Shown in pieces: positions 3,725-17,264 of a DNA stretch of 64,000 nucleotides. The stretch lies in the sequence record NC_019401.1, one strand, 5' to 3'. The notes under the pieces are model-generated. The model had not been told where the DNA came from, did not search any database, and saw only the letters and a list, made by a program, of their open reading frames with translations. Made by a program: the position numbers and the translations under genes. Within the stretch, counting starts at the first letter, position 1. Each line of letters opens with the position of its first letter.

Positions 3725-3838
3725 GTGGAGTTCGTCTAGCGGCCCAGGACACGAAAAGCGATTCTTGACTAAGAATCTTACGGCATTTATAACTTTCATT
3801 TCACGAACGTAACATGGGTTCGAATCCCATACTCCACT
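3725..3838 (+). tRNA. tRNA-Glu(TTC) interrupted by a 41-nt insertion (3754-3794) at position 28/29
   Basis: GTGGAGT/ACTCCAC acceptor; Glu-type D arm; A26-C-G|insert|TTC-ATTTCAC-GAA-CG; T arm ATGGG-TTCGAAT-CCCAT. Confidence 0.85.
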
Positions 3839-3856
3839 CAAATTGAGGAAGGTACT

Positions 3857-4150
3857 ATGAAAAGTATTCTATTTTTCCAATACGCTGCCACTGGTGAAGG
3901 TTGGACAACAGAAATTCGTTTCTGTAATCAATCCAGAATTAGTGACGAACAAGCTATTGAAGAATTCAAACAGCGTCATCACGAGTACTTTCACTGTGGT
4001 ATAGAAATGCATAACATTGATGAAGCGAAGGAAGATAAACACTTCCTACAACATTTACAAGAACATGTACCTGCTTTACATCGTTATGTTTTGGGAAATC
4101 GTGATTGTTTAATTGATATTGACTACGTGCATTACGTCAATTTTTCATAA
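3857..4150 (+). CDS. hypothetical protein
   Basis: GAGG RBS; ORF track. Confidence 0.7.
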   Translation: MKSILFFQYAATGEGWTTEIRFCNQSRISDEQAIEEFKQRHHEYFHCGIEMHNIDEAKEDKHFLQHLQEHVPALHRYVLGNRDCLIDIDYVHYVNFS

Positions 4151-4227
4151 AAATCATTGACTTGTACCGTTTGGGATGATACAATATTTTAACTGGTTTG
4201 AAATAAAAAAGTTAATGAGAGGTTATC

Positions 4228-4506
4228 ATGAGAAACGGTATTGGTATGCGTATTCAGATTATGCCAGGCGGTATCGTTATTGGTCATGTAATACCTAGTG
4301 ACCATCCTGCAAACAACGGTGTAATTGAATTAATTGAAAATCATGTATATGAATTGCGTGGCGAATCAACTTTTGACACTACATCATTTCATGATATTGG
4401 CGAAGCCGATGTGAAAATGTTTGACATAGAATCTGGTGGTTGTAGTCTGGACAAATTCATTGCTTTGGCGGGCGGCAAACATCTTACTGTGAATAACGGA
4501 AAATAA
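4228..4506 (+). CDS. hypothetical protein
   Basis: GAGG RBS; TTGACT..TACAAT promoter upstream. Confidence 0.7.
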   Translation: MRNGIGMRIQIMPGGIVIGHVIPSDHPANNGVIELIENHVYELRGESTFDTTSFHDIGEADVKMFDIESGGCSLDKFIALAGGKHLTVNNGK

Positions 4507-4508
4507 CT

Positions 4509-4706
4509 ATGAAAGTACAGTGGATTAAAATTAAAAATCCAGATGATATGCAATTCTTCGCTGGAAAGATTTATCCAAAAGATAAAGATGACTATCAATA
4601 TATCGAAGATGAATTTGGTACGCAGTACTCGGTAAGTCCTGATGGACTTAAAGAACTTCAGAATTTCGGATGGGAAATTGAGGTACAATATGAAAGTATA
4701 CATTGA
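4509..4706 (+). CDS. hypothetical protein
   Basis: ORF track; tiles with neighbours. Confidence 0.6.
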   Translation: MKVQWIKIKNPDDMQFFAGKIYPKDKDDYQYIEDEFGTQYSVSPDGLKELQNFGWEIEVQYESIH

Positions 4707-5055
4707 TGATATTCGTGATCCTCAAAAGTACTTGACTGCTGAACAAGCTGAAGGTATTGTATGGCTCAAAGAATGGTGGGAAGCAAAACGTTTTTTGATT
4801 GAACATTCTTCTGAAATTGAAGTAATTCATTTCGATCATTATATGGATGAACCAACTTTAACTGGTACTGATCTGTTTATGATGGTTGCGGGTGATTGCA
4901 TGTGGGGTGATAAAGAACATTGGCCTAATGTGAAAACCATTTATCTTCATTCTTCGGATGAAGACCATATTGAAGAATTGATGGAAAACTATGCAGAACC
5001 TATGCATAAGGCTGGTGTAGAAGTTATCAATAATAGTCAGAGGAATAATTACTGA
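4690..5055 (+). CDS. cyclic-phosphate-processing receiver (cREC-like) domain protein, copy 1
   Basis: MKVYIDDIR...W...IHFDHYM...TGTD pattern; start moved to ATG 4690 (GAGG RBS). Confidence 0.7.
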   Translation: MKVYIDDIRDPQKYLTAEQAEGIVWLKEWWEAKRFLIEHSSEIEVIHFDHYMDEPTLTGTDLFMMVAGDCMWGDKEHWPNVKTIYLHSSDEDHIEELMENYAEPMHKAGVEVINNSQRNNY

Positions 5056-5411
5056 TGAAAGTATATGTTGATGATATTCGTAATCCAGAAAACCATCTCA
5101 GTGCTGAACAGGCCGAAGGAATCCACTGGAAAAAAGAATGGTGGGAAGCAAAGAACTTTATCTTCGATAACTGCGAAGAAATTGAAACTATTCATCTGGA
5201 TAATTTCTTAGGTGATAGTACACATACTGGTGCAGATATACTTCGTATGATAACTCGTAGTTTAAAACGAGGTATGTTCCCTAAACTGAAACAAATTTAT
5301 ATTCACAGTTCTGACAAAGAAGTTGTGAATAATTTATATAACTCTCAGATCGAGCGTTGTAAAGAAGCAGGTGTTGAGTTAATAAAAAACTCACGTCCTA
5401 ATCGTACTTAA
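5055..5411 (+). CDS. cyclic-phosphate-processing receiver (cREC-like) domain protein, copy 2
   Basis: MKVYVDDIR...IHLDNFLG...TGAD...IYIHS; tandem paralogue of 4690-5055. Confidence 0.7.
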   Translation: MKVYVDDIRNPENHLSAEQAEGIHWKKEWWEAKNFIFDNCEEIETIHLDNFLGDSTHTGADILRMITRSLKRGMFPKLKQIYIHSSDKEVVNNLYNSQIERCKEAGVELIKNSRPNRT

Positions 5412-5419
5412 TAAAATAT

Positions 5420-5546
5420 GGCGAGTTAGCTCAGTGGTAGAGCACGTATGAAACCCAGGATTCCTGTACTTGAATCCCGCAGCAACTATAACTCTCAAGC
5501 CTTTTAAGCTCGTGGTCGGGGCGTTCGAATCCCCCACTCGCCGCCA
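5420..5546 (+). tRNA. tRNA-Lys(TTT) interrupted by a 51-nt insertion (5447-5497) at position 28/29
   Basis: GGCGAGT/ACTCGCC acceptor; GCTC/GAGC D stem; ACG|insert|AGC-CTTTTAA-GCT-CGT; T-loop; CCA encoded. Confidence 0.85.
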
Positions 5547-5562
5547 AATACAGGATAAAAAT

Positions 5563-5796
5563 ATGTCAATTTTTTCTGAAATTAAAAATAGTTTTTTAAA
5601 TGCTGTTAAAACTGATGTTTCTTTCGTAGATCCAGCAATTGCACGTGAGCAATCATCTAAGTCAGTAAATCCTACTACTTATGATCGCTATCAGAAGTAT
5701 CATTTTACGTCTGGAGAAATGTCTAAAATGGACAAAGTACTTGGAAATTCCATTAATGCTGTAATTGATAATATTAAAAAGGGTATCATTAGCTGA
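5563..5796 (+). CDS. hypothetical protein
   Basis: The true start is probably ATG 5563 (AGGA RBS); the 5470 start lies inside the tRNA. Confidence 0.6.
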   Translation: MSIFSEIKNSFLNAVKTDVSFVDPAIAREQSSKSVNPTTYDRYQKYHFTSGEMSKMDKVLGNSINAVIDNIKKGIIS

Positions 5797-5997
5797 TTTC
5801 AGTTATATGGTGTGAAAAATTCGCGGGTAACGCTTGACAACTGCCAAACACCCCGCTATAATAGCTGGGTGAAAATATGAAATATTTTTATGAAATTTTA
5901 ATTACGATTACAATTATCCTTTCGATTGTTGCATTCGTATCTAAAAGCTATATAATCGCAAGCATAAGCATTATCTTTTTTATTGCTGGCTGCATAA

Positions 5998-6390
5998 TTG
6001 AATTCATTCTTAACCGGAATAATTAATATGAAAACCATCTTTGCCGTTTTATTTTTTGTCGCCGCTGTAGTTTCTGTTGTGTTTGGTCAGATCCCATTTG
6101 CAATTTTCGCAGCAATGTTTTTTGTTATTTTGTTGATGGCTCATAAATCGAAAGATACAAAAACATCAGAGGAACTTCTTGTAGAAGACAGTGGAATGAT
6201 TTTGGTAGAATATGCATTCTGCTCAAATGAAGATGAAAAATTCACTGCTGAAATTCCGCACAAAAGTACTGAATCTCTGACCGAAGAAAAAGTACTTTCA
6301 GAACTGGTTGAATATATCATTGAACGCACTGGTATTCCAACTGATAGTACACGATTGAAAGTACTTTGGTATCGTGAAGTTCATGCATAA
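5998..6390 (+). CDS. membrane-anchored hypothetical protein
   Basis: N-terminal hydrophobic hairpin. Confidence 0.7.
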   Translation: MNSFLTGIINMKTIFAVLFFVAAVVSVVFGQIPFAIFAAMFFVILLMAHKSKDTKTSEELLVEDSGMILVEYAFCSNEDEKFTAEIPHKSTESLTEEKVLSELVEYIIERTGIPTDSTRLKVLWYREVHA

Positions 6391-6402
6391 TTAAATCTTG
6401 TT

Positions 6403-6424
6403 AAGCCCTTATATAAGGGCTTTT
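6403..6424 (+). terminator. intrinsic terminator
   Basis: AAGCCCTT-ATAT-AAGGGCTT followed by T run. Confidence 0.7.
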
Positions 6425-6429
6425 AAAAC

Positions 6430-6517
6430 GGGGATATGGCGAAATTGGTAGCACGCAGGAGACTCAAAATCTCCCGCCAGAGATGGCGTGTCGGTTCGAG
6501 TCCGACTATCCCCACCA
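6430..6517 (+). tRNA. tRNA-Leu(CAA)
   Basis: GGGGATA/TATCCCC; GGAGA-CTCAAAA-TCTCC; long variable arm; CCA. Confidence 0.95.
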
Positions 6518-6545
6518 ATTTTAAGTAAGAAACCAAAAATTTACC

Positions 6546-6574
6546 TTGACTTACATTTACTGAAACTGTATGAT
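6546..6574 (+). promoter_or_regulatory. sigma70-type promoter for the autotransporter
   Basis: TTGACT-N17-TATGAT. Confidence 0.7.
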
Positions 6575-6641
6575 ATATTTCAAGGCGGTAAGATGGCCGA
6601 AGCGAAGAAGTTCAATTATAAATTTACCTGTTGGTGAAAAA

Positions 6642-8375
6642 ATGAAAAAGATTCTGATAGCTGTGACGTTTTTGGGATTGTCAAGTACTTCGTTTGGGGC
6701 AACCAGTCCAAATGACTATAAAGTTTCATGTGATTCAGTTAATAGTCACGCAAGTCAGCAACAATGGTCACAAGTTGCTGCTGAATTACCACGTCTGACA
6801 AATGCGTTGGGGCGTACTCCAACTGAAACTGAAATGAAAGCCTGCGTTGGTAAATCAAATTGGGATGGTTGGCAAAATTCTTCAAGTTATGTACCTACTA
6901 CCCCTGGTGGTACAGTTTCAGTAAGTAAAGATGATTTCAAAAAAGATCAGGATCGCCAAGATGCAAATCTTGATAAAGAAACTCAAGATCGCCAAGATTC
7001 CGACCAGAAAATCGTTGATGACCAGAAAAATGTTGACGATGCTCAGAACGTAGAAATCGGCAAAAAGGCAGATCAATCAGCATTGGATCAAGAAGTTCAG
7101 GATCGTAAAGACGGAGATAAAGCCCTGTCTGATACGATTGATAAGAACAAATCTGAACAGGCAACCAAAGATGGAGAACAGGATCAAGCTATTACTGACC
7201 TTGATAAAAACAAAGTCAATAAAGATGATCAAAAAGCCGTTGATAATGCACAAAACGCCGCCATCGGTGAAAAAGCAAATCAATCAGATCTGGATAAAGA
7301 AGTAGCTAATCGTACTGATGGTGACAAAGCATTGTCCGACAGTATTCAAAAATCCAAAGATGATCAGGCTGCTATTGATGCCGCCCAAAACGTGGTAATT
7401 GATAGTAAGGCGAATCAAGCCGACCTGGAAAAAGAAGTAGCTGATCGTCAATCAGGTGATGATAAACTTCATAGTCAGATTGATCAAAATAACGCACGTG
7501 ATGATGCTCAAGATGTAGCCATAAATGGCAAAGTAGATAAATCTACCTATTCAGTTGATAAAGCTAAACAAGCTGTTCATGATGCTGTTCAGGATGCTGC
7601 GATTGTTGGTCTTGTGGTAACTAAAGCTGACAAAGCTGTTCTGGATAAAGAAGTAACTGCTCGCAAAGATGCGGATAAAGTACTGCAATCAAATATTGAT
7701 TCTGAAGCCCAAACTCGTGTTAACGCCGATATTGCGTTGAAGAACAATATTGATCAGAACAAAGCAGACCAGGCTAAAACTGACGCTAAACAAGATAAGG
7801 CTCTCAGTACTGAAACTGATAACCGTATCGCTGGAGATAATGCACTGAAAGCTAACATTGATAAAAACAAAGCTGACCAAGCCGTAACCGATTCTAATCA
7901 GGATAAGGTTATCACAACTAAAGCAAGTAAGATCGAACTGACAAGTGAAACTGCGTCCCGCAAATCTGCTGATGCGAAGTTGTCCAACCGAATCGATTCT
8001 AACGATGCTACGTTAGTCCAACATGACCAACGCATTACCAGCAATACTCAACGTATTGGTTCTGTAGAAGGTCGTGTATCCAATCTGGAACAAAGTACTA
8101 ACAAGCGTTTCTCTGATATGGACAAACGTATCGGTGATAACCGTAAAGTTGCAAGTGCAGGTATTGCTGGTGCTGGTGCAATGGCGAACATTCCCCAGGT
8201 ATCACAGGGAAGTACGTTCTCAGTCGGTGCTGGTGTCGGTGGGTATGATTCTGAACAAGCGGTTGCCGTAGGGTTTAGTGCACGTGTGAATAACAATGTC
8301 GTCACTAAAATGTCTGTAAGCACTAATACTCAGTCTGAAGTACTTTGGGGTGCAGGTGTTGGTGTAGAGTGGTAA
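6642..8375 (+). CDS. YadA-like trimeric autotransporter adhesin
   Basis: Signal peptide MKKILIAVTFLGLSSTSFGA; coiled-coil stalk with repeated ExxxRxxxDxxL; C-terminal anchor ASAGIAGAGAMANIPQ...GAGVGVEW. Confidence 0.9.
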   Translation: MKKILIAVTFLGLSSTSFGATSPNDYKVSCDSVNSHASQQQWSQVAAELPRLTNALGRTPTETEMKACVGKSNWDGWQNSSSYVPTTPGGTVSVSKDDFKKDQDRQDANLDKETQDRQDSDQKIVDDQKNVDDAQNVEIGKKADQSALDQEVQDRKDGDKALSDTIDKNKSEQATKDGEQDQAITDLDKNKVNKDDQKAVDNAQNAAIGEKANQSDLDKEVANRTDGDKALSDSIQKSKDDQAAIDAAQNVVIDSKANQADLEKEVADRQSGDDKLHSQIDQNNARDDAQDVAINGKVDKSTYSVDKAKQAVHDAVQDAAIVGLVVTKADKAVLDKEVTARKDADKVLQSNIDSEAQTRVNADIALKNNIDQNKADQAKTDAKQDKALSTETDNRIAGDNALKANIDKNKADQAVTDSNQDKVITTKASKIELTSETASRKSADAKLSNRIDSNDATLVQHDQRITSNTQRIGSVEGRVSNLEQSTNKRFSDMDKRIGDNRKVASAGIAGAGAMANIPQVSQGSTFSVGAGVGGYDSEQAVAVGFSARVNNNVVTKMSVSTNTQSEVLWGAGVGVEW

Positions 8376-8430
8376 ACACTCAGAGGGATATTCGTATCCC
8401 TCATTTTAATTGAGCCTAAAAGAGTTTATT

Positions 8431-8940
8431 ATGAATAACGAAATGTTTCCATATATTAACAAGGGATGCTCGCGTGTAGTTTATGGCATCAATGACGATA
8501 TGGTTATCAAGATCGCCAGATATTTAAACACTGATTCCAATTCATCCAATATTGCACGTTGGGGAATTGATCAATGTAAAACTGAACTCGAAACTTATCT
8601 GCGTTACGGTGATAAATTTCCTTTGTGTAAAATTTTCATTGACTTATCCAATGAACAGCGTATAGTAATGGAAAGGGTAACACCTCTTACCGATTCTCAT
8701 TTGTGTCTAGAGTTGAGTAAGATAAATGATCTTATCTATCGCCTAGCGATGGAAGAAGAACGTGATGAGCCTGATTATCTGGAATCGCTTCATCCAATGT
8801 TACAGTCATTTGCTAAAAAAATATTAGAAAGTGGCTTGACACGGCAAGAGATTCATGATATACTCGATGACGTAGAGATGAATAACGTCGGTATAAAGAA
8901 CAATGAATTAGTTATTTTAGATTACGGTTTAGTCGGCTAA
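8431..8940 (+). CDS. minimal protein-kinase-like (PKL fold) enzyme
   Basis: GCSRVVY Gly loop, VIKIA Lys, helix-C Glu, DDVEMNNVG catalytic loop, LDYG (DFG equivalent). Confidence 0.75.
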   Translation: MNNEMFPYINKGCSRVVYGINDDMVIKIARYLNTDSNSSNIARWGIDQCKTELETYLRYGDKFPLCKIFIDLSNEQRIVMERVTPLTDSHLCLELSKINDLIYRLAMEEERDEPDYLESLHPMLQSFAKKILESGLTRQEIHDILDDVEMNNVGIKNNELVILDYGLVG

Positions 8941-9089
8941 AATAATTAAAAAAGTCCTTGACTTAAAATTTAAAGTTTGATAGTATAATCAACATCGACG
9001 GATGTAAAGCGTGAGTCTGGTATATAATTATAAAATAAAGATTATAATTAATACTTTTTGAAAAATAAAATATAAGGTTTAAAAAGAGA

Positions 9090-9305
9090 ATGGCTAAGAA
9101 TATTATTACTGATATTGGCGAAGTTGAACGTACTGTGAACTACATCCAGTTCCAGATTTCTCAGGCAGATGCAATGCTTGCACCATTCGCCAACAGCGAT
9201 AAATCCAAGATCTGCTATGCACATCTTCTGGACTGGAAGAAATCATTGCAGAACGAACTGCATGAGATCCGTAAAGCTCAGCAGAAAGCACGTTACCACA
9301 AGTAA
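9090..9305 (+). CDS. hypothetical protein
   Basis: ORF track. Confidence 0.6.
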   Translation: MAKNIITDIGEVERTVNYIQFQISQADAMLAPFANSDKSKICYAHLLDWKKSLQNELHEIRKAQQKARYHK

Positions 9306-10549: not shown

Positions 10550-10556
10550 AAATAAA

Positions 10557-10585
10557 TGAAACGATAAAAATTTTTGTGGTATAAT
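10557..10585 (+). promoter_or_regulatory. TGAAAC-N17-TATAAT promoter (RNA-gene class)
   Basis: TGAAAC 10557-62; TGTGG-TATAAT 10575-85. Confidence 0.75.
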
Positions 10586-10745: not shown

Positions 10746-11282
10746 ATGAACATATACAAAATTGCAAAAGAATTGATGAATAAGCACAATCTACAGGATT
10801 GGTCTTTCGAAATTTATGAAAGTTCAAATAAGCGTGTTCCTGGAACAACCAATACAATTGGAATGTGCATCTATCATGAAAAAGTTATCGCCATTTTAGA
10901 AGCGGTTGCTTATAGTCGTAGTGAAGAATATGTTCGTAGTTTAATATTGCATGAAATTGCACATGCATTAGCTGGTCATGAAAATGGTCATAATGAAGTA
11001 TGGCAGAAAATTGCAATAGAAATTGGTTCTAAACATATCACATCATGTGCAAACATGATTGAGTTTTTAAACCATAAAAATACAATCCGCAATTGTACTC
11101 ATCCGTATGTTTGGAAATTTATGAAGTATTTTTCAAATACTGATGAGTTAGTATTCAACTTAAACCGTATACACGGTAAAAGTACACAGTACTGGTATAA
11201 TGAATATCTAAGGATTTTAAAGTTTCAGGAACGTTTAAAAAAACGTAAAAAAATTGAAACGAATCAAAAATTTGTGGTATAA
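10746..11282 (+). CDS. SprT-like zinc metalloprotease
   Basis: LILHEIAHAL...GHNEVWQKIA (HExxH plus GH..W); start moved to ATG 10746. Confidence 0.8.
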   Translation: MNIYKIAKELMNKHNLQDWSFEIYESSNKRVPGTTNTIGMCIYHEKVIAILEAVAYSRSEEYVRSLILHEIAHALAGHENGHNEVWQKIAIEIGSKHITSCANMIEFLNHKNTIRNCTHPYVWKFMKYFSNTDELVFNLNRIHGKSTQYWYNEYLRILKFQERLKKRKKIETNQKFVV

Positions 11283-11283
11283 T
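11255..11283 (+). promoter_or_regulatory. TGAAAC-N17-TATAAT promoter (RNA-gene class)
   Basis: TGAAAC 11255-60; TGTGG-TATAAT to 11283. Confidence 0.75.
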
Positions 11284-11300: not shown

Positions 11301-11418
11301 GAAATCTTACAGCAAACAATATCTTATATTTTTTATGCGAAAAAAACGATGTGGTTCGAATCCACAACAACCATGTTGCTATGTTGGTTGTGCATGGGGC
11401 TAGAAAACAACAGATTTC
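11301..11418 (+). ncRNA. ACAGCAA element, permuted tRNA-like form
   Basis: GAAATCT/AGATTTC helix; ACAGCAA; TGTGG-TTCGAAT-CCACA; ACAACCA/TGGTTGT. Confidence 0.75.
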
Positions 11419-11676: not shown

Positions 11677-11688
11677 CAAAGTAGTTTT

Positions 11689-11770
11689 GGGGAGTTGGCA
11701 GAGCGGTCGAATGCACCTGACTGTAAATCAGGCACACCACACCCTGGTTCGAATCCAGGACGCCCCACCA
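11689..11770 (+). tRNA. tRNA-Tyr(GTA)
   Basis: CCTGA-CTGTAAA-TCAGG; T arm CCTGG/CCAGG; CCA. Confidence 0.92.
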
Positions 11771-11771
11771 A

Positions 11772-11878
11772 AAGAATCGCACAGCAAACATAAATCTTAT
11801 ATATTTCATTTGGCGAAAAACACCTTCGGTTCAATTCCGATTTACCACTGGTTGTGGGGATAGAAAAACACGATTCTT
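11772..11878 (+). ncRNA. ACAGCAA element with Gln-like anticodon arm and T arm (permuted)
   Basis: AAGAATCG/CGATTCTT; TTTC-ATTTGGC-GAAA; TCGG-TTCAATT-CCGA. Confidence 0.7.
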
Positions 11879-11905
11879 GTTTTTAATTTAGAAAATAAAA
11901 TGACG

Positions 11906-11985
11906 GAAGTGGGATTTAAACAGCAAACTAACCCTTTACTGAAAATCATATAGTAGATGGATTACTCGGAATTTCGATTCCCTTC
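11906..11985 (+). ncRNA. ACAGCAA element, degenerate
   Basis: GAAG(T)GGGA/TCCCTTC helix; ACAGCAA at 11920. Confidence 0.5.
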
Positions 11986-12106
11986 TTAATCATTACTCGC
12001 ACAGTATTAAAACAGTGTATTGTTTAAGTTCGTCAACTTATTCAATTATCCTTTTATTAAATCCCGTATAATAAAGTACTTAAATCCTATTGGACAGTAC
12101 TTTTAT

Positions 12107-12201
12107 GGAAGATTGGCAGAGTCTGGTTTATTGCACCGCACTTGAAATGCGGCGAACTAGTAACCCTAGTTCCTACGGTTCAAATCCGTAATCTTCCTCC
12201 A
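12107..12201 (+). tRNA. tRNA-Ser(TGA)
   Basis: GGAAGAT/ATCTTCC; CCGCA-CTTGAAA-TGCGG; long variable arm; CCA. Confidence 0.95.
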
Positions 12202-12207
12202 AATCTT

Positions 12208-12330
12208 GGGAAAGTAGCTCAGTTGGTAGAGCAGGTAAGAAAACCCAAATTACTGTATTGTAATTTCACAGCAACCATACTTCATCCACTTTTAATGGCC
12301 TGGTCGTTGGTTCAAATCCAACCTTTCCCA
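12208..12330 (+). tRNA. tRNA-Lys(TTT) interrupted by a 50-nt insertion (12236-12285) at position 28/29
   Basis: GGGAAAG/CTTTCCC; GCTC/GAGC; AGG|insert|CCA-CTTTTAA-TGG-CCT; GTTGG-TTCAAAT-CCAAC. Confidence 0.85.
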
Positions 12331-12333
12331 CAC

Positions 12334-12395
12334 AGAATCTAACAGCAAACCTTATTTTATCAAACTTTTACTTTGAAACCAAAATAATAGATTCT
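12334..12395 (+). ncRNA. minimal ACAGCAA element displaying a Lys(UUU) anticodon stem-loop
   Basis: AGAATCTA/TAGATTCT; CAAA-CTTTTAC-TTTG. Confidence 0.7.
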
Positions 12396-12422
12396 AGTAC
12401 TTTTAAATTCGAGAAGAATATA

Positions 12423-12824
12423 TTGGAAAATGATGAAATTGAAAATATGTTAGTTGAAGCATTGCGTAAAATCGACACTTCATCATATGAGTTTAAATCT
12501 TCCAAAGAGATTTCGAATTCGGAATTTGGTTCTGATGGAAAGCGACAATACTTAAAACTGTTTTTTGAAAAAAGTTCAGGGGAAGTAAGTATAGAATTCA
12601 TTTATCATTCTATAAAAGATACGTTAAAATTCAGAACTCAATATGTTGACCATTGTGATGAAGATGAAGACTTTGATGAAACTAGCATATCGCAAAAAAT
12701 ACCGCGAACTGAAGAAGAATATTTTCAGTACAGCACTATCCAAAATAATATTTTTAGTTTAGAGTTTTATACTTTATTAGAAAAGATAATGTCAGAATTG
12801 CTAGTAAAGTGGAAATCTAAATAA
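12423..12824 (+). CDS. EExxFQxST-family hypothetical protein
   Basis: C-terminal RTEEEYFQYSTIQ motif shared with eight other ORFs. Confidence 0.7.
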   Translation: MENDEIENMLVEALRKIDTSSYEFKSSKEISNSEFGSDGKRQYLKLFFEKSSGEVSIEFIYHSIKDTLKFRTQYVDHCDEDEDFDETSISQKIPRTEEEYFQYSTIQNNIFSLEFYTLLEKIMSELLVKWKSK

Positions 12825-12843
12825 AGATACACGAGGAAATACA

Positions 12844-13053
12844 ATGTTTTACGATTACTACTATAAAGTAGATGGTGTGCTTCGTCGTCATACATCTTCT
12901 GAAGAACTAAGCGATGAGCAAATCAGTAGTGTTTTCGGTTCACAAAAGAAAGTAGTACTACTAGAGCCTGTAGTTTTTGAACGCAGCGTTATTGTTGATG
13001 AAAAAGCAAAAACTATAAAAGAACACGTAGGATTTATTGGTTACGTGGAATAA
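12844..13053 (+). CDS. hypothetical protein
   Basis: GAGG RBS; ORF track. Confidence 0.65.
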   Translation: MFYDYYYKVDGVLRRHTSSEELSDEQISSVFGSQKKVVLLEPVVFERSVIVDEKAKTIKEHVGFIGYVE

Positions 13054-13076
13054 TAAAGAATAACGTAACAATAATA

Positions 13077-13122
13077 AAGAATCCATACAGCATTACTTTG
13101 GTCAATAATATATTGGATTCTT
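13077..13122 (+). ncRNA. minimal ACAGCA element (possible Gln-UUG loop)
   Basis: AAGAATCC/GGATTCTT; ACAGCA; CTTTGGT loop. Confidence 0.55.
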
Positions 13123-13147
13123 GTTTTAATTAAGGTGAGATTAAAAA

Positions 13148-13372
13148 ATGGATAATCAACATAAACAAATTAAAGGATACCGAGATTTATCTCAGAAAGA
13201 GATTAATCAAATGAATGCTATTAAAGATATCGCTGCTAAAGTGGGTGATATTATTGATGCATTACAAGATGACCCTGACGTTGATCAACGATGGCTTGCA
13301 ATTGCAAAAACTGACCTTCAAAAAGGTTTTATGTCAGCAGTGCGAAGCGTAGCTAAACCGGACTCTTTTTAA
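13148..13372 (+). CDS. acb2: anti-CBASS cyclic-nucleotide sponge Acb2
   Basis: MDNQHKQIKGYRDLSQKEI...RWLAIAKTDLQKGFMSAVRSVAKPDSF matches my recollection of Acb2 at both termini. Confidence 0.9.
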   Translation: MDNQHKQIKGYRDLSQKEINQMNAIKDIAAKVGDIIDALQDDPDVDQRWLAIAKTDLQKGFMSAVRSVAKPDSF

Positions 13373-13767
13373 TGGACAAATATAATCGTTTGTACGAAAT
13401 AGGTGAAGATCACTTAATAAGTCTGATGAAAATAGAATGCCCTCGATCAATATTAGGATTTTCAAAACACATTGTATTCAATAAAAATGATTCATTTACT
13501 ATGACTGATTGGGCAATCTTCTTTCATTTGGAAGACGGCATTAATACATTTAGTGTAATGATAGAACCAAATAATACATTCAAAGCATTGTACTATGAAA
13601 CCGAAGAAGAATTTGATGAAAATTACCACTTTACATTTTACAATGTTCCATATGACATTACTGAAGAATGGCACTTTCAGTTATGTACACAAAAGTATAT
13701 GCCATTCAGTTTTGAATTTCATACAAAATTAAAAGAATTTATTGAATTATGTATTAAAATAATGTAA
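13372..13767 (+). CDS. EExxFQxST-family hypothetical protein
   Basis: ITEEWHFQLCT motif. Confidence 0.7.
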   Translation: MDKYNRLYEIGEDHLISLMKIECPRSILGFSKHIVFNKNDSFTMTDWAIFFHLEDGINTFSVMIEPNNTFKALYYETEEEFDENYHFTFYNVPYDITEEWHFQLCTQKYMPFSFEFHTKLKEFIELCIKIM

Positions 13768-13772
13768 CAAAT

Positions 13773-13846
13773 GGGAATATAGCACAATTGGTCAGTGCAC
13801 TCGCCCGATAAGCGAGATGTTACGTGTTCGAGTCACGTTATTCCCA
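13773..13846 (+). tRNA. tRNA-Ile(GAT), with C33
   Basis: GGGAATA/TATTCCC; CTCGC-CCGATAA-GCGAG. Confidence 0.88.
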
Positions 13847-13850
13847 CTAA

Positions 13851-14045
13851 GTAGTACTGTGAAATTGTCCAACACAATAGGTAGCACTTTGGATGAATCA
13901 GTAAGCCTATATCGTACTACACCGAATATGTCTGACCACGGAAAAACGCCGATGACCGTGACAAAAAATATGAAGGGAACTTTATAAGTATTATCTACTA
14001 TCATTAAGTTGATGAAGGTATTATAAAGTGGCGTCCTTCCAGACA
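13851..14045 (+). ncRNA. candidate structured RNA (two domains, possible pseudoknot)
   Basis: GTAGTAC/GTACTAC, TCCAA/TTGGA, loop ATAGG with CCTAT; TGTCTG/CAGACA multibranch domain. Confidence 0.45.
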
Positions 14046-14053
14046 ACAAATTA

Positions 14054-14192
14054 AAGAATCTAACAGCAATTCAATTGTTAACTAAAAATAGCTGCCTCGC
14101 GGCATGTAGGTTCGAATCCTACGAACTATGTCAGTACTGAATAGTGATGGTGAAACAGGTAGACACGGCTATCAACACAAACATAGATTCTT
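14054..14192 (+). ncRNA. ACAGCAA element enclosing a circularly permuted tRNA-Leu-like sequence
   Basis: 3' half (ATAGC, variable arm, GTAGG-TTCGAAT-CCTAC) precedes 5' half (ATAGTGA-TG-GTG-AAACAGGTAGA-CAC-G-GCTAT). Confidence 0.8.
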
Positions 14193-14310
14193 GTATTAAT
14201 TAAATCTACAAGAGCATACGTATATTGATTCAATAAGCTATAGACTTTATACGATGGGTAGCAGATGGCTTATCATCTGTCGGTAGTTACGCTGCGGCTA
14301 CCAACAAATT

Positions 14311-14414
14311 TGGAATTCAACAGCAATTCATACTATCCCGCCGCATGTCGCAGTTTCGAGTCCTGCCTTCACTTCGGTATGGTAGATCAGCGGCCTAAAA
14401 AGAAATAAATTCCA
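14311..14414 (+). ncRNA. ACAGCAA element enclosing a degenerate permuted tRNA
   Basis: TGGAATT/AATTCCA; GCGGC/GCCGC anticodon stem; TTCG-capped acceptor remnant; paralogue of 15460-15580. Confidence 0.7.
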
Positions 14415-14428
14415 GTATTAATTAAAAA

Positions 14429-14436
14429 TATAAATA
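14429..14436 (+). promoter_or_regulatory. T4-type late promoter
   Basis: TATAAATA about 30 nt upstream of the ART gene. Confidence 0.55.
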
Positions 14437-14466
14437 TTCCTATATAACTTTTAATGGGGTATTGTT

Positions 14467-15066
14467 GTGGAAATGAAAAAGCTGATGGAAGATATTTCTG
14501 CCATCATGGAAGGACAAATGCCAGGATACTACTATCACGGCACTAAACAACCGATTCACACTTTTAGTGATGAATTTGTTGGAAAGGGTAATGACCAATA
14601 CGGTCCAGGAATTTACTTCACAAGTAATCCTAGTACTGCATTTGGTTATACTGATAAATCACCAAATGGTGTGGTTTATCAATGCACTCTGAATATTAGA
14701 AAAGAATTGTCCAAGAAACAAAGAATTAATAAAGCAGTACTTTTGAAGTTAATGAAAAGTACTCCAGACGATGAAGCATATACCAATTGGGGTGAACACC
14801 CAAACCGTGCATATCAAAATGCTTTAAATTCATATATGGATGCAGATGATAACATGTATGATGCATTAATGAATGTATGGTATGATTGGTATAGGTATCA
14901 CGGAACAGAATTTGTAAGAAAGCTTGTTGAATTGGGTTATGATGCTTTTACACATAAATTTGAAAGCGGTGAGTTATTTGTTATAGTATATAACCCTGCA
15001 AGTATTAATGTTGTTAAATCATATACTGTAGAACAAGCTAGAAATGAACTACTTCAATCTAAATAA
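14467..15066 (+). CDS. ADP-ribosyltransferase-fold protein (ART-PolyVal-like)
   Basis: YYHGT...G...GPGIYFTS..A..Y motif. Confidence 0.7.
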   Translation: MEMKKLMEDISAIMEGQMPGYYYHGTKQPIHTFSDEFVGKGNDQYGPGIYFTSNPSTAFGYTDKSPNGVVYQCTLNIRKELSKKQRINKAVLLKLMKSTPDDEAYTNWGEHPNRAYQNALNSYMDADDNMYDALMNVWYDWYRYHGTEFVRKLVELGYDAFTHKFESGELFVIVYNPASINVVKSYTVEQARNELLQSK

Positions 15067-15092
15067 TATAGTACTAACTATGTTATAAGGGA

Positions 15093-15452
15093 TTGGGAAT
15101 GTTCAAGACTCGTTTAAAAGTTGAATTAATCAACAACGAAGGAAAGAAGTGGAAACTTATTGAAGATTTGGTTTACGAAGATAAAAAGCACGGAAGAATC
15201 ACTATTCCTGCTGGATTCGAAACTGACTTTGCAAGTGTACCTAGAATACCAGTTGTGTTTGAATTGGTAGGGGATCGTGGTCATGCAGCAGCAACACTAC
15301 ATGATTGGTTATATCATAATGATAATCTATCACGCAAAGAAGTTGATAAGATTCTACTTCAAGCTTTAAGAGATACGAATGTAGGTAAAGTTCGTTCATA
15401 TTTGATGTACTTTGGTGTACGAGGATTTGGTTGGATGTTTTTTAAGAAATAA
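15093..15452 (+). CDS. DUF1353 family protein
   Basis: IPAGFETDFASVPR...AAATLHDWLY...MYFGVRGFG. Confidence 0.85.
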   Translation: MGMFKTRLKVELINNEGKKWKLIEDLVYEDKKHGRITIPAGFETDFASVPRIPVVFELVGDRGHAAATLHDWLYHNDNLSRKEVDKILLQALRDTNVGKVRSYLMYFGVRGFGWMFFKK

Positions 15453-15459
15453 AAGAATT

Positions 15460-15580
15460 TGGAATTCAACAGCAAATCAATTCTATCCACGCAACATGTC
15501 GCAGGTTCAAGTCCTGCCAGTACTTTCGAGTACTGTAGCTCAGTTGGTAGAGCAGTCGCCTATAAAAGAAATGAATTCCA
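15460..15580 (+). ncRNA. ACAGCAA element enclosing a near-perfect circularly permuted tRNA
   Basis: GCAGG-TTCAAGT-CCTGC, CAGTACT-TTCG-AGTACTG, TA-GCTC-AGTTGGTA-GAGC; TGGAATTCA/TGAATTCCA outer helix. Confidence 0.85.
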
Positions 15581-15871
15581 GTTTTAATTTATATTGGAGA
15601 AAAATATGTCAAAAATTATTAAGTCTATTAAAAGTGATTTGGAAAAGATGGTATCTTTAGGATTAGCATCAACTGAAACGGTTAATAAAGTTATTCCAAT
15701 TTCTAATGTTTCTTCGAAGAAGAATTCTAAAAAGAAATAAATTCAAGTTTTAATCAAATTCACCAGTCGTACTATGGTTTGACACGGATAGCATGTTATC
15801 CTATTAAGGTCAGAATAGAATACGTATTAGTTCCTTGGTCGGAACTTATGTAAACTCAATTTGTACTAATT

Positions 15872-15925
15872 TAGAATCTAACAGCAATTAAAACTTCTCG
15901 GATATAGAAAAAACAATAGATTCTA
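15872..15925 (+). ncRNA. minimal ACAGCAA element
   Basis: TAGAATCTA/TAGATTCTA; TTCT-CGGATAT-AGAA hairpin. Confidence 0.7.
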
Positions 15926-15951
15926 GCTTTGATTAAACTAAAAGGTTTGAT

Positions 15952-16185
15952 ATGAAAAATATAAAAATGTATTTGTTACAGCGTGAAAATAGAGATGATG
16001 ATTACGTAGGAGTACTTAACGGTACTAACGTTATGGTCGTATCTGATTTACTAAAACATATTTGGACTAATCCTGACCGATTTATAGCAGAAAACTTAAC
16101 ATTCCCATATACATTAGAAACATATTATGGTGATGTAAATATTCTTGACACGGCTACTCTTGTATGGGAACGTGACATAGAATAA
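15952..16185 (+). CDS. hypothetical protein
   Basis: ORF track. Confidence 0.6.
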   Translation: MKNIKMYLLQRENRDDDYVGVLNGTNVMVVSDLLKHIWTNPDRFIAENLTFPYTLETYYGDVNILDTATLVWERDIE

Positions 16186-16198
16186 AAAAAAAGAATTT

Positions 16199-16262
16199 GG
16201 AATCTAACAGCAACCATATATTGAACTCAACTGTTAATTGAAAACCTCAAAAAATGGATTCC
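16199..16262 (+). ncRNA. minimal ACAGCAA element displaying an Asn(GUU) anticodon stem-loop
   Basis: GGAATCTA/TGGATTCC; TCAA-CTGTTAA-TTGA. Confidence 0.75.
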
Positions 16263-16279
16263 CGCCTTTTTAAAATAAA

Positions 16280-16308
16280 TGAAACACCACAAAAAAATGT
16301 GGTATAAT
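16280..16308 (+). promoter_or_regulatory. TGAAAC-N17-TATAAT promoter (RNA-gene class)
   Basis: Directly upstream of tRNA-Asn. Confidence 0.75.
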
Positions 16309-16324
16309 ATAAGTATAAACAAAT

Positions 16325-16397
16325 GGTTACGTAGCTCAGCGGTTAGAGCGTTCGCCTGTTAAGCGAAGGGTCGCTGGTTCAAATCCAGCCGTGATCG
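16325..16397 (+). tRNA. tRNA-Asn(GTT)
   Basis: GGTTACG/CGTGATC; TTCGC-CTGTTAA-GCGAA. Confidence 0.93.
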
Positions 16398-16401
16398 CAA
16401 A

Positions 16402-16465
16402 AAGAATCTTGCAGCAAACATATTAAACATATTTTTTGGGTAAATAAACGTTAAAACGGATTCTT
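16402..16465 (+). ncRNA. minimal GCAGCAA element displaying a Pro(UGG) anticodon stem-loop
   Basis: AAGAATCT/GGATTCTT; ATTT-TTTGGGT-AAAT. Confidence 0.7.
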
Positions 16466-16473
16466 GTTTTTTT

Positions 16474-16546
16474 AGGGGATTAGCCAAGTTGGTAAGGCAC
16501 ATGGTTTTGATCCATGTATGCGGAGGTTCGAGTCCTCCATCCCCTG
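16474..16546 (+). tRNA. tRNA-Gln(TTG)
   Basis: AGGGGAT/ATCCCCT; CATGG-TTTTGAT-CCATG. Confidence 0.93.
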
Positions 16547-16682
16547 CTAAATCACTTCCTTTGTGATTTAAGCTGGTATGATTCCCCTAGCTTGTAAAAT
16601 TATATAACGGGAACCGCGTTGCACCTGAATGGGTCGGGTCGTAAAGATCAAGTACATTCAATACTGAGAGCGGCAGTACACT

Positions 16683-16754
16683 GCATCCATCGTATATCGG
16701 CTATTATAATTGGCTTCCACCCAATAGAACGGAGTTCGACCCTCCGTGGATGCT
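16683..16754 (+). tRNA. tRNA-Gly(TCC)
   Basis: GCATCCA/TGGATGC; ATTGG-CTTCCAC-CCAAT; U73. Confidence 0.93.
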
Positions 16755-16874
16755 CAAAATTTAACAAAACAATATAAGGTAAATTATATGCTATAGAATC
16801 CTAGTACTGGTCCTCCTGATAAGTTTAATTCAGAACAAACTACTAAATTAAACAATATCAAAAAGGAACATATT

Positions 16875-17201
16875 ATGTTAAACAAAGAACAATACATTAC
16901 TGTAAAAACAACCTGGAAAAAAGTTAAAGAGCACACTGTACACGAACACATTATCTATAATGTACTTCGGGGTAAAGATGCTGATGAAGGGTTTGTAGCC
17001 TTAACCGATTGGGGTCGTTTGAACGCAAGTGATAACAATCCGTGGTTTAACTATGATAACGCAGTACGCGAAATTCATTATCAGTTGAATGCAAAGCGTT
17101 ATAGCTATGAAAATACAGTAAAACATTATTCCGATGTTTTCGGCATTGATTTAACTCCTGAACTAGTTGCAGAAGTACTACAAGCAATTAAGTTCAAGTA
17201 A
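16875..17201 (+). CDS. hypothetical protein
   Basis: AAGGA RBS. Confidence 0.75.
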   Translation: MLNKEQYITVKTTWKKVKEHTVHEHIIYNVLRGKDADEGFVALTDWGRLNASDNNPWFNYDNAVREIHYQLNAKRYSYENTVKHYSDVFGIDLTPELVAEVLQAIKFK

Positions 17202-17208
17202 CAGAATT

Positions 17209-17264
17209 TAGAATCTAACAGCAATTAAAACTCATTTGGATAATATGAAAAACAATAGATTCTA
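17209..17264 (+). ncRNA. minimal ACAGCAA element (near-copy of 15872-15925)
   Basis: TAGAATCTAACAGCAATTAAAACT...GAAAAACAATAGATTCTAG. Confidence 0.7.

What the first reader, a model, noticed from the sequence alone, without database searches (positions are those of the whole stretch)
3725..17264. Sixteen-copy ACAGCAA RNA element family: tRNA introns, permuted tRNAs and anticodon-display mini-RNAs
SEEN: one motif recurs 16 times in the tRNA cluster. It is an A-rich linker ending AAAC(N), a helix with strands (R)GATTC and GAATC(Y), then NN-ACAGCAA (variants GCAGCAA, ACGGCAT). In three copies it is a hairpin inside a tRNA gene at the same position, 28/29 (3754-3794, 5447-5497, 12236-12285). In 13 copies the same strands appear in reverse order (GAATC-ACAGCAA ... 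AAAC-GATTC), an exact circular permutation. These enclose either permuted tRNA halves (10603, 11301, 11772, 14054, 14311, 15460) or only a small hairpin, often an anticodon stem-loop (11906, 12334, 13077, 15872, 16199, 16402, 17209). The helix sequence varies between copies while pairing is kept. ESTABLISHED: bacterial and phage tRNA introns are group I/II and far larger. Small non-canonical-position introns and permuted tRNA genes matured via circular intermediates are known from archaea and algae such as Cyanidioschyzon, where BHB motifs are used. The permuted intron-exon layout yields circular RNA. INFERENCE: this may be a new small splicing or processing module, either self-cleaving or recognised by a phage nuclease/ligase. 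It would make mature tRNAs from interrupted genes and circular tRNA-like RNAs from permuted ones, perhaps to evade or decoy host anticodon nucleases. I do not recognise it as a named family.
Basis: partly seen in the sequence, partly recalled or inferred. Interest (0 to 1): 0.95.

Follow-up and report, generated by a model that had tools for sequence, protein, structure and literature searches.

The report
Phage Y-RNA-like tRNA mimics
The sixteen repeats are real structured RNAs, but they are probably not introns or split tRNA genes: they look like a new kind of "Y RNA" (tRNA look-alikes with a docking stem) that partners a Ro60-like ring protein encoded by this and hundreds of other phages.

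Summary
The window is the right end of Cronobacter jumbo phage GAP32. All 16 copies are present. Thirteen have an open terminal helix (P1) followed by ACAGCAA. Three have the same module as a capped hairpin inside tRNA-shaped genes. P1 keeps pairing while its sequence changes, and no further copy lies elsewhere in the window.

The "permuted tRNA halves" have acceptor stems closed by a loop. That is the layout of bacterial YrlA Y RNAs; Rfam YrlA scores 44.7 bits against a cut-off of 69. The Ro60-binding CGAA motif is absent and no ribozyme family matches.

The same P1+ACAGCAA RNAs lie directly beside a DUF2828/DUF7788 gene in 9 of 10 unrelated loci examined. These include Listeria, Enterococcus, Staphylococcus, Mycobacterium, Campylobacter, Klebsiella and E. 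coli phages. GAP32 encodes this protein (GAP32_176) next to an RNA ligase, and its predicted fold matches only Ro60 over its full length.

Best reading: these are partner RNAs of a Ro60-like protein that display tRNA or anticodon-arm mimics, probably in the conflict over tRNA cleavage and repair. Splicing or circularisation is not supported, but it is not excluded. I found no description of this pairing.

The parts
3725..3838 (+). tRNA-shaped gene (loop ATTTCAC, Glu-type) carrying the module as an extra arm
   Evidence: Read from the sequence. Conserved with covarying acceptor stem in CBB, XbC2, Kaldavass and BF. Annotated tRNA-OTHER in CBB and Kaldavass.
3754..3794 (+). Hairpin-type module: A-rich stretch, P1 hairpin 3760-3777, TT, core ACGGCAT 3780-3786, linker
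   Evidence: P1 changes with pairing kept in XbC2 and Kaldavass (GATTCC/GGAATC).
5420..5546 (+). tRNA-shaped gene (loop CTTTTAA, Lys-type, CCA encoded) carrying the module
   Evidence: GenBank lists it as a 127-nt tRNA-Lys. Orthologues exist in all four relatives; the lower anticodon stem covaries in BF (AGC/GCT to ACA/TGT).
5447..5497 (+). Hairpin-type module: P1 hairpin 5458-5477, core GCAGCAA 5479-5485
12208..12330 (+). tRNA-shaped gene (loop CTTTTAA, Lys-type) carrying the module
   Evidence: Rfam tRNA 49.5 bits with a long insert.
12236..12285 (+). Hairpin-type module: P1 hairpin 12247-12266 (AAATTAC/GTAATTT), core ACAGCAA 12268-12274
10556..10585 (+). Promoter-like site 18 nt before element 10603
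   Evidence: ATGAAA-18-TATAAT with TG. It matches the phage-specific promoter type described for CBB and GAP32 (PMC5259590).
10603..10722 (+). Open-type element: T-arm-like hairpin, capped acceptor-like hairpin, small D-like hairpin
   Evidence: model R1 21.5 bits, E 0.031; orthologues.
11254..11283 (+). Promoter-like site 18 nt before element 11301
   Evidence: TTGAAA-18-TATAAT with TG.
11301..11418 (+). Open-type element: perfect T arm (TGTGG TTCGAAT CCACA) and a 7-bp capped acceptor-like stem
11772..11878 (+). Open-type element: T-arm-like hairpin plus a second hairpin
   Evidence: R1 37.2 bits, E 9e-6, full length. P1 is AAGAATCG/CGATTCTT here and AGGATTCG/CGAATCCT in BF.
11908..12067 (+). 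Large open-type element (~155 nt) with a body of unknown fold
   Evidence: P1 is GGGATTTAA/TTAAATCCC. Orthologues have GGATTCAG/TTGAATCC, GGATTCT/AGAATCC and GGATTTAT/ATAAATCC. It is only weakly seen by R1.
12334..12395 (+). Small open-type element showing a Lys-type anticodon arm (TCAAA CTTTTAC TTTGA)
   Evidence: R1 55.8 bits (seed member).
13077..13122 (+). Smallest open-type element (core ACAGCAT), no clear inner hairpin
   Evidence: R1 25.5 bits, E 0.004.
14054..14192 (+). Open-type element with a class-II tRNA-like body: 7-bp inner stem, variable arm, T arm, capped acceptor, 3-bp D stem
14310..14415 (+). Open-type element, a degraded-looking paralogue of 15459
   Evidence: R1 24.4 bits, E 0.007.
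15459..15581 (+). Open-type element with a complete tRNA-like body (T arm, CAGTACT-TTCG-AGTACTG capped acceptor, D arm)
   Evidence: Rfam YrlA 44.7 bits, E 3e-9, cut-off 69.
15871..15926 (+). Small open-type element (inner hairpin TTCT CGGATAT AGAA)
   Evidence: R1 55.4 bits (seed).
16199..16262 (+). Small open-type element showing an Asn-type anticodon arm (TCAA CTGTTAA TTGA), 60 nt before tRNA-Asn
   Evidence: The loop is conserved in CBB, XbC2, Kaldavass, BF and two metagenome contigs.
16402..16465 (+). Small open-type element (core GCAGCAA)
   Evidence: R1 48.1 bits (seed).
17208..17265 (+). Small open-type element (inner hairpin TCAT ... ATGA)
   Evidence: R1 59.6 bits (seed).

Best explanation
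The 16 elements are a family of small non-coding RNAs built like Y RNAs.

The docking module is constant. It consists of helix P1, the single-stranded ACAGCAA at its inner end, and an A-rich opposite strand. I infer that it binds the phage's own Ro60-like ring protein, GAP32_176. That protein has Pfam DUF2828 + DUF7788/vWA domains and is encoded about 190 kb away, beside an RNA ligase.

The variable part is a display domain. It is one of three things:
- a whole tRNA mimic (T arm, D arm, acceptor stem closed by a loop);
- a tRNA 'top half';
- only an anticodon-arm-like hairpin.

In three genes the chain is broken at the acceptor end instead of at P1. The same module then appears as an extra arm on an otherwise normal-looking tRNA.

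The resulting particle would couple a Ro-type RNA-handling ring to tRNA-shaped baits. Its most likely arena is the fight over tRNA cleavage and repair. It could act as a decoy for host anticodon nucleases. Alternatively it could be an adaptor for tRNA-binding enzymes such as the neighbouring ligase or host PNPase.

Shown: the RNA anatomy, helix covariation, YrlA-like topology, genomic linkage to the protein in many phages, and the protein's Ro60 fold.
Inferred: physical binding and the biological role.
For: - Structure. P1 covaries in 8 of 8 pairs and the T stem in 3 of 5.
- Topology. tRNA-like copies hit Rfam YrlA below threshold in GAP32 (44.7 bits), EFDG1 (44.9 and 34.2), Snenia (39.3) and a Klebsiella phage (36.4 and 34.3).
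- Linkage. P1+ACAGCAA elements lie 13-340 nt from the DUF2828 gene, on the same strand. This holds in Listeria A511, Enterococcus EFDG1, E. coli wV8, mycobacteriophage Snenia, Campylobacter PC14, Klebsiella phi1_175008, Staphylococcus SEP9, a metagenome scaffold and a Fischerella contig.
- Enrichment. There are 22 elements in 21 kb of such flanks, against 3.2 per 100 kb of strand in 97 unrelated loci.
- Relatives. GAP32, CBB, XbC2, Kaldavass, BF and fHe-Yen9-04 all carry both the RNA family and the protein.
- Protein. GAP32_176 is DUF2828 (1e-32) plus DUF7788 (9e-43). Its AlphaFold model has pLDDT 87.8. The eight best PDB matches are all Ro60/TROVE over the full length, with E 7e-9 to 7e-7 and TM 0.46-0.59.
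- Neighbour. An RNA ligase gene sits next to it in GAP32 and CBB.
- Virions. The CBB orthologue CBB_183 was found in virions by mass spectrometry (PMC5259590).
- Context. Anti-defence genes (Acb2-like, ART-PolyVal) are interleaved with the RNAs.
- Loops. Anticodon-type loops are over-represented in the small copies: 11 of 45 against 1.7 +/- 1.3 in shuffles.
- Precedent. Phage TROVE Ro60 binds adjacent Y-like RNAs (PMC12135203; PMC4201824).
Against: - No binding or expression data exist.
- In GAP32 itself the RNAs are not next to the protein gene.
- One DUF2828 locus (Vibrio phage nt-1) gave no clear element.
- The known Ro60 motif GNCGAAN0-1G is absent from all 16 copies.
- The protein has no significant sequence match to Ro60, so the analogy rests on fold and gene neighbourhood.
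- DUF2828 genes often sit in tRNA clusters, which could create some of the linkage indirectly.
- The elements were collected with a pattern that fixes four core positions, so the invariance of those positions is partly built in.
- Many of the anticodon-type loops are orthologues of one another.
- The split anticodon stems of the three tRNA-shaped genes would also fit an excised insert.
Confidence: 0.65

Rival explanations
1. First reader's model. The module marks a small intron or processing unit. It is cut out of the three tRNA genes, which restores the anticodon stem. In the open-type copies, cutting releases a body that is circularised. The cutting would be done by a ribozyme or a phage nuclease, and the joining by phage ligases.
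For: - The 5-bp anticodon stems of four independent genes (three in GAP32, one in BF) are complete only without the insert.
- The insert borders lie at similar distances from the module in three of the four: about 11 nt on each side. This holds although the BF insert sits after position 31 instead of 28.
- GAP32 encodes RnlA, PseT kinase/phosphatase and a second RNA ligase.
- P1 brings the two ends of the open-type RNAs together.
Against: - No Rfam ribozyme or intron family matches at E <= 10.
- No bulge-helix-bulge can be drawn and the splice-site sequences are not conserved.
- Acceptor stems of the 'permuted' copies are capped by short loops without CCA.
- Applying the 11/11 spacing to copy 15459 gives a 5-nt loop.
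- The CBB orthologue of gene 12208 would have a 10-nt loop even if spliced. XbC2 and Kaldavass orthologues of gene 3725 would have an 8-nt loop.
- Standard tRNA-Lys and tRNA-Glu genes are present.
- The same module occurs beside DUF2828 genes in phages where it encloses no tRNA part.
Confidence: 0.12
2. The repeats are expression punctuation, not RNAs with a function of their own. P1 plus the following U-rich tail would act as a terminator or as an RNase processing site. Such sites would separate tRNAs from small early genes.
For: - The P1 3' strand is followed by G/T-rich 'TTTTAATT'-type tails. Two ordinary terminator hairpins in the window have similar tails.
- The elements sit between genes and tRNAs.
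Against: - ACAGCAA is kept across Actinobacteria, Firmicutes and Proteobacteria phages while P1 changes completely.
- The bodies carry conserved tRNA-like domains.
- Two copies have their own promoters 18 nt upstream.
- The linkage is to one protein family, not to gene boundaries in general.
Confidence: 0.06
3. The repeats act at the DNA level (a miniature inverted-repeat element or homing-endonuclease target), or they are decaying tRNA pseudogenes.
For: - Inverted repeats flank variable inserts.
- HNH endonuclease genes occur in these tRNA clusters.
- Copy 14310 looks like a degraded 15459.
- An orphan 3' end lies near 15722-15760.
Against: - All copies are on the tRNA strand.
- Orthologous copies are syntenic in five phages that are only 74-86% identical. 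Their compensatory changes keep pairing.
- T-arm and D-arm features are conserved.
- The core motif is asymmetric and sits on one side only.
Confidence: 0.04

Closest known systems
YrlA / bacterial Y RNAs bound by Ro60 (Rsr); Rfam RF02553 (Chen et al. 2014, PMC4201824)
   Same: A modular RNA in which the 5' and 3' ends pair in a stem that carries a short conserved single-strand motif on the 5' strand. The rest is a tRNA-like domain in the order T arm, loop-capped acceptor stem, D arm. It is encoded beside the gene of a ring protein made of HEAT repeats plus a vWA domain, on the same strand, often with several RNAs per locus.
   Different: - The scores are 34-45 bits against a cut-off of 69.
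- The motif is ACAGCAA, not GNCGAAN0-1G.
- The partner gene is Pfam DUF2828/DUF7788, not TROVE, and is related to Ro60 only at the fold level.
- Many copies carry only an anticodon-arm-like hairpin.
- GAP32 has 16 copies scattered through its tRNA cluster, far from the protein gene.
- Three copies are embedded in tRNA-shaped genes.
Thermus phage phiLo Ro60 with Yrl1/Yrl2 (PMC12135203)
   Same: A phage-encoded Ro60-fold protein with small stem-bulge-stem RNAs encoded just upstream. It is the best structural match to GAP32_176 (9kop, E 7e-9).
   Different: phiLo Ro60 is a TROVE-family protein. Its RNAs use a CGAA motif and have no tRNA-like domain reported. Binding has been shown there and not here.
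   Same: In six copies the 3' part of a tRNA-like body precedes the 5' part. Three genes have small inserts at a non-canonical position in the anticodon stem.
   Different: There is no bulge-helix-bulge. No splicing endonuclease was seen in the regions read. The acceptor ends are capped rather than processable. Joining does not reliably give a normal anticodon loop.
Phage tRNAs that replace or evade host anticodon-nuclease targets (PMC10264068)
   Same: The elements sit in a phage tRNA cluster. The displayed loops are of Lys, Asn, Glu, Ile, Cys and Ser types, which overlap known nuclease targets.
   Different: These are not decoding tRNAs. They are mimics tied to a protein-docking module.

Membership tests
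YrlA (Rfam RF02553) | Reaches the family's gathering score (69 bits) | tested here: not met
   The best window copy (15473-15581) scores 44.7 bits, E 3e-9. Relatives score 34-45 bits. The other 15 copies give no hit at E <= 10.
YrlA (Rfam RF02553) | tRNA-like domain (T arm, capped acceptor stem, D arm) with the 5' and 3' ends paired in a terminal stem | tested here: met
   Met fully by 14054, 14310 and 15459. Met in part (T arm plus capped stem) by 10603, 11301 and 11772. Not met by the seven small or large copies without a T arm.
YrlA (Rfam RF02553) | GNCGAAN0-1G (CGAA) Ro60-binding motif near the 5' end (PMC4201824) | tested here: not met
   The full motif is in 0 of 16 copies. A GNCGAA string occurs once, internally, at 11812.
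YrlA (Rfam RF02553) | Encoded within a few kb of a Ro60 (TROVE) gene on the same strand | tested here: not met
   There is no TROVE gene near the elements in the window. The related DUF2828 gene of GAP32 lies about 190 kb away. In nine other loci the elements do lie within 13-340 nt of the DUF2828 gene.
Ro60/TROVE protein family (for the proposed partner GAP32_176) | HEAT-repeat ring plus C-terminal vWA domain; sequence membership in Pfam TROVE | tested here: inconclusive
   The fold test is met: the top 8 PDB matches are all Ro60, over the full length. Sequence membership is not met: Pfam gives DUF2828 + DUF7788 and only a weak VWA_2, and profile searches of PDB sequences reach E 0.62 at best.
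Bulge-helix-bulge tRNA introns / permuted tRNA genes | Two 3-nt bulges separated by a 4-bp helix at the exon-intron borders | tested here: not met
   Inspection of the three insert borders and the orthologues found no such pairing and no conserved border sequence.
Bulge-helix-bulge tRNA introns / permuted tRNA genes | Removal or joining yields a standard tRNA (7-nt anticodon loop, free acceptor end with CCA or a site for it) | tested here: inconclusive
   This is met on paper for the three GAP32 insert genes. It is not met for the CBB orthologue (10-nt loop) or the XbC2/Kaldavass orthologues (8-nt loop). It is not met for the open-type copies, which have capped acceptors and would give a 5-nt loop for 15459.
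Bulge-helix-bulge tRNA introns / permuted tRNA genes | Spliced or circular RNA products | not testable with these tools
   No RNA data are available.
Known self-cleaving ribozymes and group I/II introns (Rfam) | Match to a family covariance model | tested here: not met
   cmscan of 3000-18500 at E <= 10 lists only tRNA, one YrlA hit and chance-level matches.

The most novel reading that the evidence does not exclude
The Ro60-like ring and its neighbouring RNA ligase might form a protein-based RNA end-joining machine that reads the P1+ACAGCAA module. It would close the open-type RNAs into exonuclease-proof circles. It would also excise the module from the three tRNA-shaped genes. That would be a small-intron and circular-RNA pathway with no precedent in bacteria or phages.
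Probability: 0.08. Interest if true: 0.95.

Novelty: new variant of a known kind. Interest (0 to 1): 0.72.

Why it matters
DUF2828 proteins occur in more than 700 sequenced phage genomes. They also occur in thousands of metagenome sequences. Their function is unknown.

Tying them to a recognisable RNA partner gives the family a testable role. The partner has an invariant ACAGCAA beside a covarying stem and carries tRNA or anticodon-arm mimics.

The link also extends the Ro60/Y-RNA principle to a second, sequence-unrelated protein family. It explains many 'tRNA-OTHER', 'pseudo-tRNA' and over-long tRNA annotations in jumbo phages. It points to tRNA mimicry as a phage tool in the conflict over tRNA cleavage and repair.

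Finally, it supplies a search handle for annotating these RNAs in phage genomes.

Tried and rejected
- T4 stable RNAs. T4 rnaC and rnaD in the T4 tRNA cluster lack the module.
- Rfam. Ribozymes and introns give no match.
- Strand test. Counting G-U against A-C pairs in P1 gave 5 against 5, which is uninformative. The strand assignment rests on the tRNA features, promoters and gene orientation.
- Alignment A4. A MAFFT alignment of all small copies misaligned the 3' strands and was not used.
- PDB sequence searches. Sequence and profile searches with the protein gave no significant Ro60 hit. Only the fold search did.
- A 17th copy. The candidate at 58480-58548 (core GCGGCAA) is not seen by the model and is taken as chance.
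- IMG/VR 14-mer scan. Most matches of the exact 14-mer were chance. They were re-used as background.
- Vibrio phage nt-1. The locus is ambiguous.
- An '11 nt / 11 nt' cutting rule. It gives a 7-nt loop for copy 14054 but a 5-nt loop for 15459, so I dropped it.
- Literature. Searches for YrlA+phage, GAP32+tRNA, permuted tRNA+phage, DUF2828, Ro-like and TROVE+bacteriophage found no description of this RNA or this pairing.
- Paper not held. Burroughs & Aravind 2016 could not be read.

Disclosure. All comparisons rest on Rfam searches and on text read from papers.

Full report
**Source and observation**

The window is the last 64 kb of Cronobacter jumbo phage vB_CsaM_GAP32. It corresponds to NC_019401.1 294664-358663 at 100% identity. 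ARAGORN and Rfam find 18-19 ordinary tRNA genes.

ACAGCAA occurs 20 times, against 9.8 +/- 3.05 in shuffles. Twelve of these lie on the + strand between 10.6 and 17.3 kb.

A script looked for a helix strand ending 0-3 nt before the core and for its partner.

The core is ACAGCAA in 12 copies, GCAGCAA in 2, ACAGCAT in 1 and ACGGCAT in 1. The stretch before the 3' strand is A-rich but does not always read AAAC.

A covariance model was built from 20 small copies of nine phages or contigs. It finds ten copies in the window at E < 0.05. All are on the + strand between 10.6 and 17.3 kb. Nothing else scores better than E = 0.18. Five window copies were in the seed, so their scores are by construction.

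**It is RNA, and the helix is real**

The family is syntenic in the related phages CBB, XbC2, Kaldavass and BF, which are 74-86% identical in DNA. It is also present in several jumbo metagenome contigs.

Orthologous copies change both strands of P1 together. One copy has AAGAATCG/CGATTCTT in GAP32 and AGGATTCG/CGAATCCT in BF. Another has GGGATTTAA/TTAAATCCC, with GGATTCT/AGAATCC and GGATTTAT/ATAAATCC in its orthologues.

In a MAFFT alignment of 14 tRNA-like copies, RNAalifold predicts P1 and the T stem on its own. All 8 P1 pairs show double changes, and 93.8% of cells are paired. No shuffle out of 500 reached the covariation score, and slid controls drop to 28-50% paired. Twenty small copies give the same picture.

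**What the bodies are**

Copies 15459, 14054 and 14310 have this order of parts: an inner stem, an optional variable arm, a T arm, an acceptor stem closed by a short loop, then a D arm. In 15459 the capped acceptor reads CAGTACT-TTCG-AGTACTG.

Copies 10603, 11301 and 11772 keep a T arm and a capped stem only.

This is the topology of bacterial YrlA Y RNAs. Copy 15459 hits Rfam YrlA at 44.7 bits (E 3e-9). That is below the 69-bit cut-off. The motif that defines YrlA, GNCGAAN0-1G (PMC4201824), is absent from all 16 copies. No ribozyme or intron family matches at E <= 10.

Of the small copies, 12334 shows a Lys-type loop (CTTTTAC on a 5-bp stem). Copy 16199 shows an Asn-type loop (CTGTTAA), which is conserved in all relatives. 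The other small copies have non-canonical loops.

Across 45 small copies from many phages, 11 have a stem with a 7-nt anticodon-type loop. Shuffles give 1.7 +/- 1.3. Many of the 11 are orthologues. Independent cases include:
- an Ile-type loop in Campylobacter phage PC14;
- a Ser-type loop in mycobacteriophage Snenia;
- Cys-type loops in metagenome contigs.

**The three tRNA-shaped genes**

In 3725-3838, 5420-5546 and 12208-12330 the module sits between positions 28 and 29. The anticodon stem is complete only across the insert.

All three genes are conserved in the four relatives, with covarying acceptor stems and covarying P1. Several observations argue against decoding tRNAs that need splicing:
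- The CBB orthologue of 12208 has a 10-nt loop.
- The XbC2 and Kaldavass orthologues of 3725 have an 8-nt loop.
- Normal Lys(UUU) and Glu(UUC) genes exist at 23547 and 11605.
- A Klebsiella phage has an open-type copy with the same cyclic order of parts: D arm, A-rich strand, P1, core, linker, anticodon arm, T arm, acceptor.

The insert genes are therefore best seen as the same RNA with the chain break moved to the acceptor end.

Still, the insert borders lie about 11 nt from the module on each side in three of four genes. One of these is a BF gene whose insert follows position 31. Excision therefore cannot be excluded.

**The lead that changes the reading**

An exact 14-mer scan of viral contigs gave mostly chance hits. 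It also gave copies with quite different P1 sequences and the same core.

One such contig is an Enterococcus phage of the EFDG1 type. In EFDG1 the elements lie immediately upstream of a 510-aa 'RNA-binding protein', on the same strand. That protein is Pfam DUF2828 + DUF7788 with a weak vWA signal.

tblastn finds this protein in about 710 phage records. I fetched ten loci. Nine have one to four P1+ACAGCAA elements within 13-340 nt of the gene, on its strand:
- A511, EFDG1, wV8, Snenia, PC14, Klebsiella phi1_175008 and SEP9;
- a metagenome scaffold, and a contig labelled Fischerella.

Vibrio phage nt-1 is unclear.

That makes 22 elements in 21 kb of flank. Ninety-seven unrelated loci give 3.2 per 100 kb of strand. 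The tRNA-like copies of these phages also hit YrlA below threshold.

**The protein in GAP32**

GAP32_176 (record 105937-107451) is a DUF2828/DUF7788 protein. It lies directly after the RNA ligase GAP32_175, which has PHA02142 OB and RNA_ligase domains. There is no element beside it.

Sequence and profile searches of PDB sequences find nothing significant.

An AlphaFold model built from a 30-sequence alignment has pLDDT 87.8 and pTM 0.86. Its eight best Foldseek matches in the PDB are all Ro60/TROVE proteins: phage phiLo, Xenopus, human and Deinococcus. They align over the whole length, with E 7e-9 to 7e-7. The next matches are isolated vWA domains at E > 1e-3.

All five phages that share the RNA family encode the orthologue. 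In CBB the orthologue is CBB_183. Its authors detected it in virions with 8 peptides, and it lies two genes from RNA ligase CBB_181 (PMC5259590).

GAP32 also encodes RnlA and the PseT kinase/phosphatase.

**Mechanism proposed**

Ro60 binds the terminal stem of Y RNAs through a short motif on the 5' strand (PMC4201824, PMC12135203). By analogy, P1 with ACAGCAA and the opposite A-rich strand would be the docking site for the DUF2828 ring. The variable tRNA-like or anticodon-arm domain would be the displayed part.

Two copies have their own promoter-like sites 18 nt upstream. P1 is followed by the same U-rich tail type as two ordinary terminators. The neighbouring genes include an Acb2/Tad1-type sponge and an ART-PolyVal domain.

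I therefore place the particle in counter-defence around tRNA cleavage and repair. It would act as a decoy or an adaptor. Binding and function are inferences.

**Novelty**

Phage Ro60 with adjacent Y-like RNAs is known for TROVE proteins and CGAA-motif RNAs. I found nothing on DUF2828 proteins paired with ACAGCAA RNAs, on the anticodon-arm display, or on the tRNA-embedded form. One relevant review could not be read. I rate the finding a new variant of a known kind.

**Limits**

- The collecting pattern fixes four core positions.
- Linkage could be inflated because DUF2828 genes often sit in tRNA clusters.
- No RNA or binding data exist.

Noticed in passing
window 13148-13372 and 14467-15066: Small genes between the RNA elements carry anti-defence-type domains: Acb2/Tad1 hairpin (PF24729, 4e-21) and ART-PolyVal (PF18760, 3e-11). 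A SprT-like protein lies at 10746-11282.
   Followed up: partly
window 12223-12342 and 16619-16777: Annotated CDS GAP32_431A lies inside the tRNA-shaped gene 12208-12330. GAP32_439A overlaps tRNA-Gly 16683-16755. Both are probably spurious ORF calls.
   Followed up: no
window about 15722-15760: An orphan copy of an element's 3' end (A-rich stretch, AAATTCAAG, TTTTAATCAAATTC) follows ORF GAP32_438. It matches the 3' end of the XbC2/Kaldavass orthologue of element 15459. It looks like a duplication around an inserted ORF and is unexplained.
   Followed up: no
L003 12505-12582, L004 11652-11728, L005 about 10840-10960: XbC2 and Kaldavass have a tRNA-shaped RNA whose anticodon arm is a long UUCG-capped hairpin. 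At the same place BF has a tRNA-shaped gene with the module inserted after position 31 and a CTGTAAA (Tyr-type) loop.
   Followed up: partly
L002 8861-8970 and L004 4641-4749: 110-nt 'tRNA-Val/Arg' annotations in CBB and Kaldavass. They have a long structured extra region and no ACAGCAA module.
   Followed up: no
L124 1974-2324; L126 2498-3049: Enterococcus phage EFDG1 carries a tmRNA gene (140.6 bits). Listeria phage A511 has a ROOL-like RNA (87.5 bits, cut-off 99.1). Both lie in the tRNA region next to the DUF2828 locus.
   Followed up: no
window 10556-10585, 11254-11283, 16279-16308: Three promoter-like sites share a TGAAAC(G) box and an extended -10. This is the phage-specific type reported for CBB and GAP32. 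Two precede RNA elements and one precedes tRNA-Asn.
   Followed up: partly
L136 2238-3752 (CBB_183); L125 19504-22452: The DUF2828 protein of CBB is listed among virion proteins found by mass spectrometry. In both CBB and GAP32 an RNA ligase gene lies just upstream.
   Followed up: partly
L133 2365-8002: On a 76-kb metagenome scaffold the DUF2828 gene and its ACAGCAA RNA lie among PARP, WGR and T4 Rnl1-type ligase genes.
   Followed up: no
window 4690-5055 and 5055-5411: Two adjacent paralogous ORFs (GAP32_420 and GAP32_421) lie just before the tRNA-shaped gene 5420-5546.
   Followed up: no
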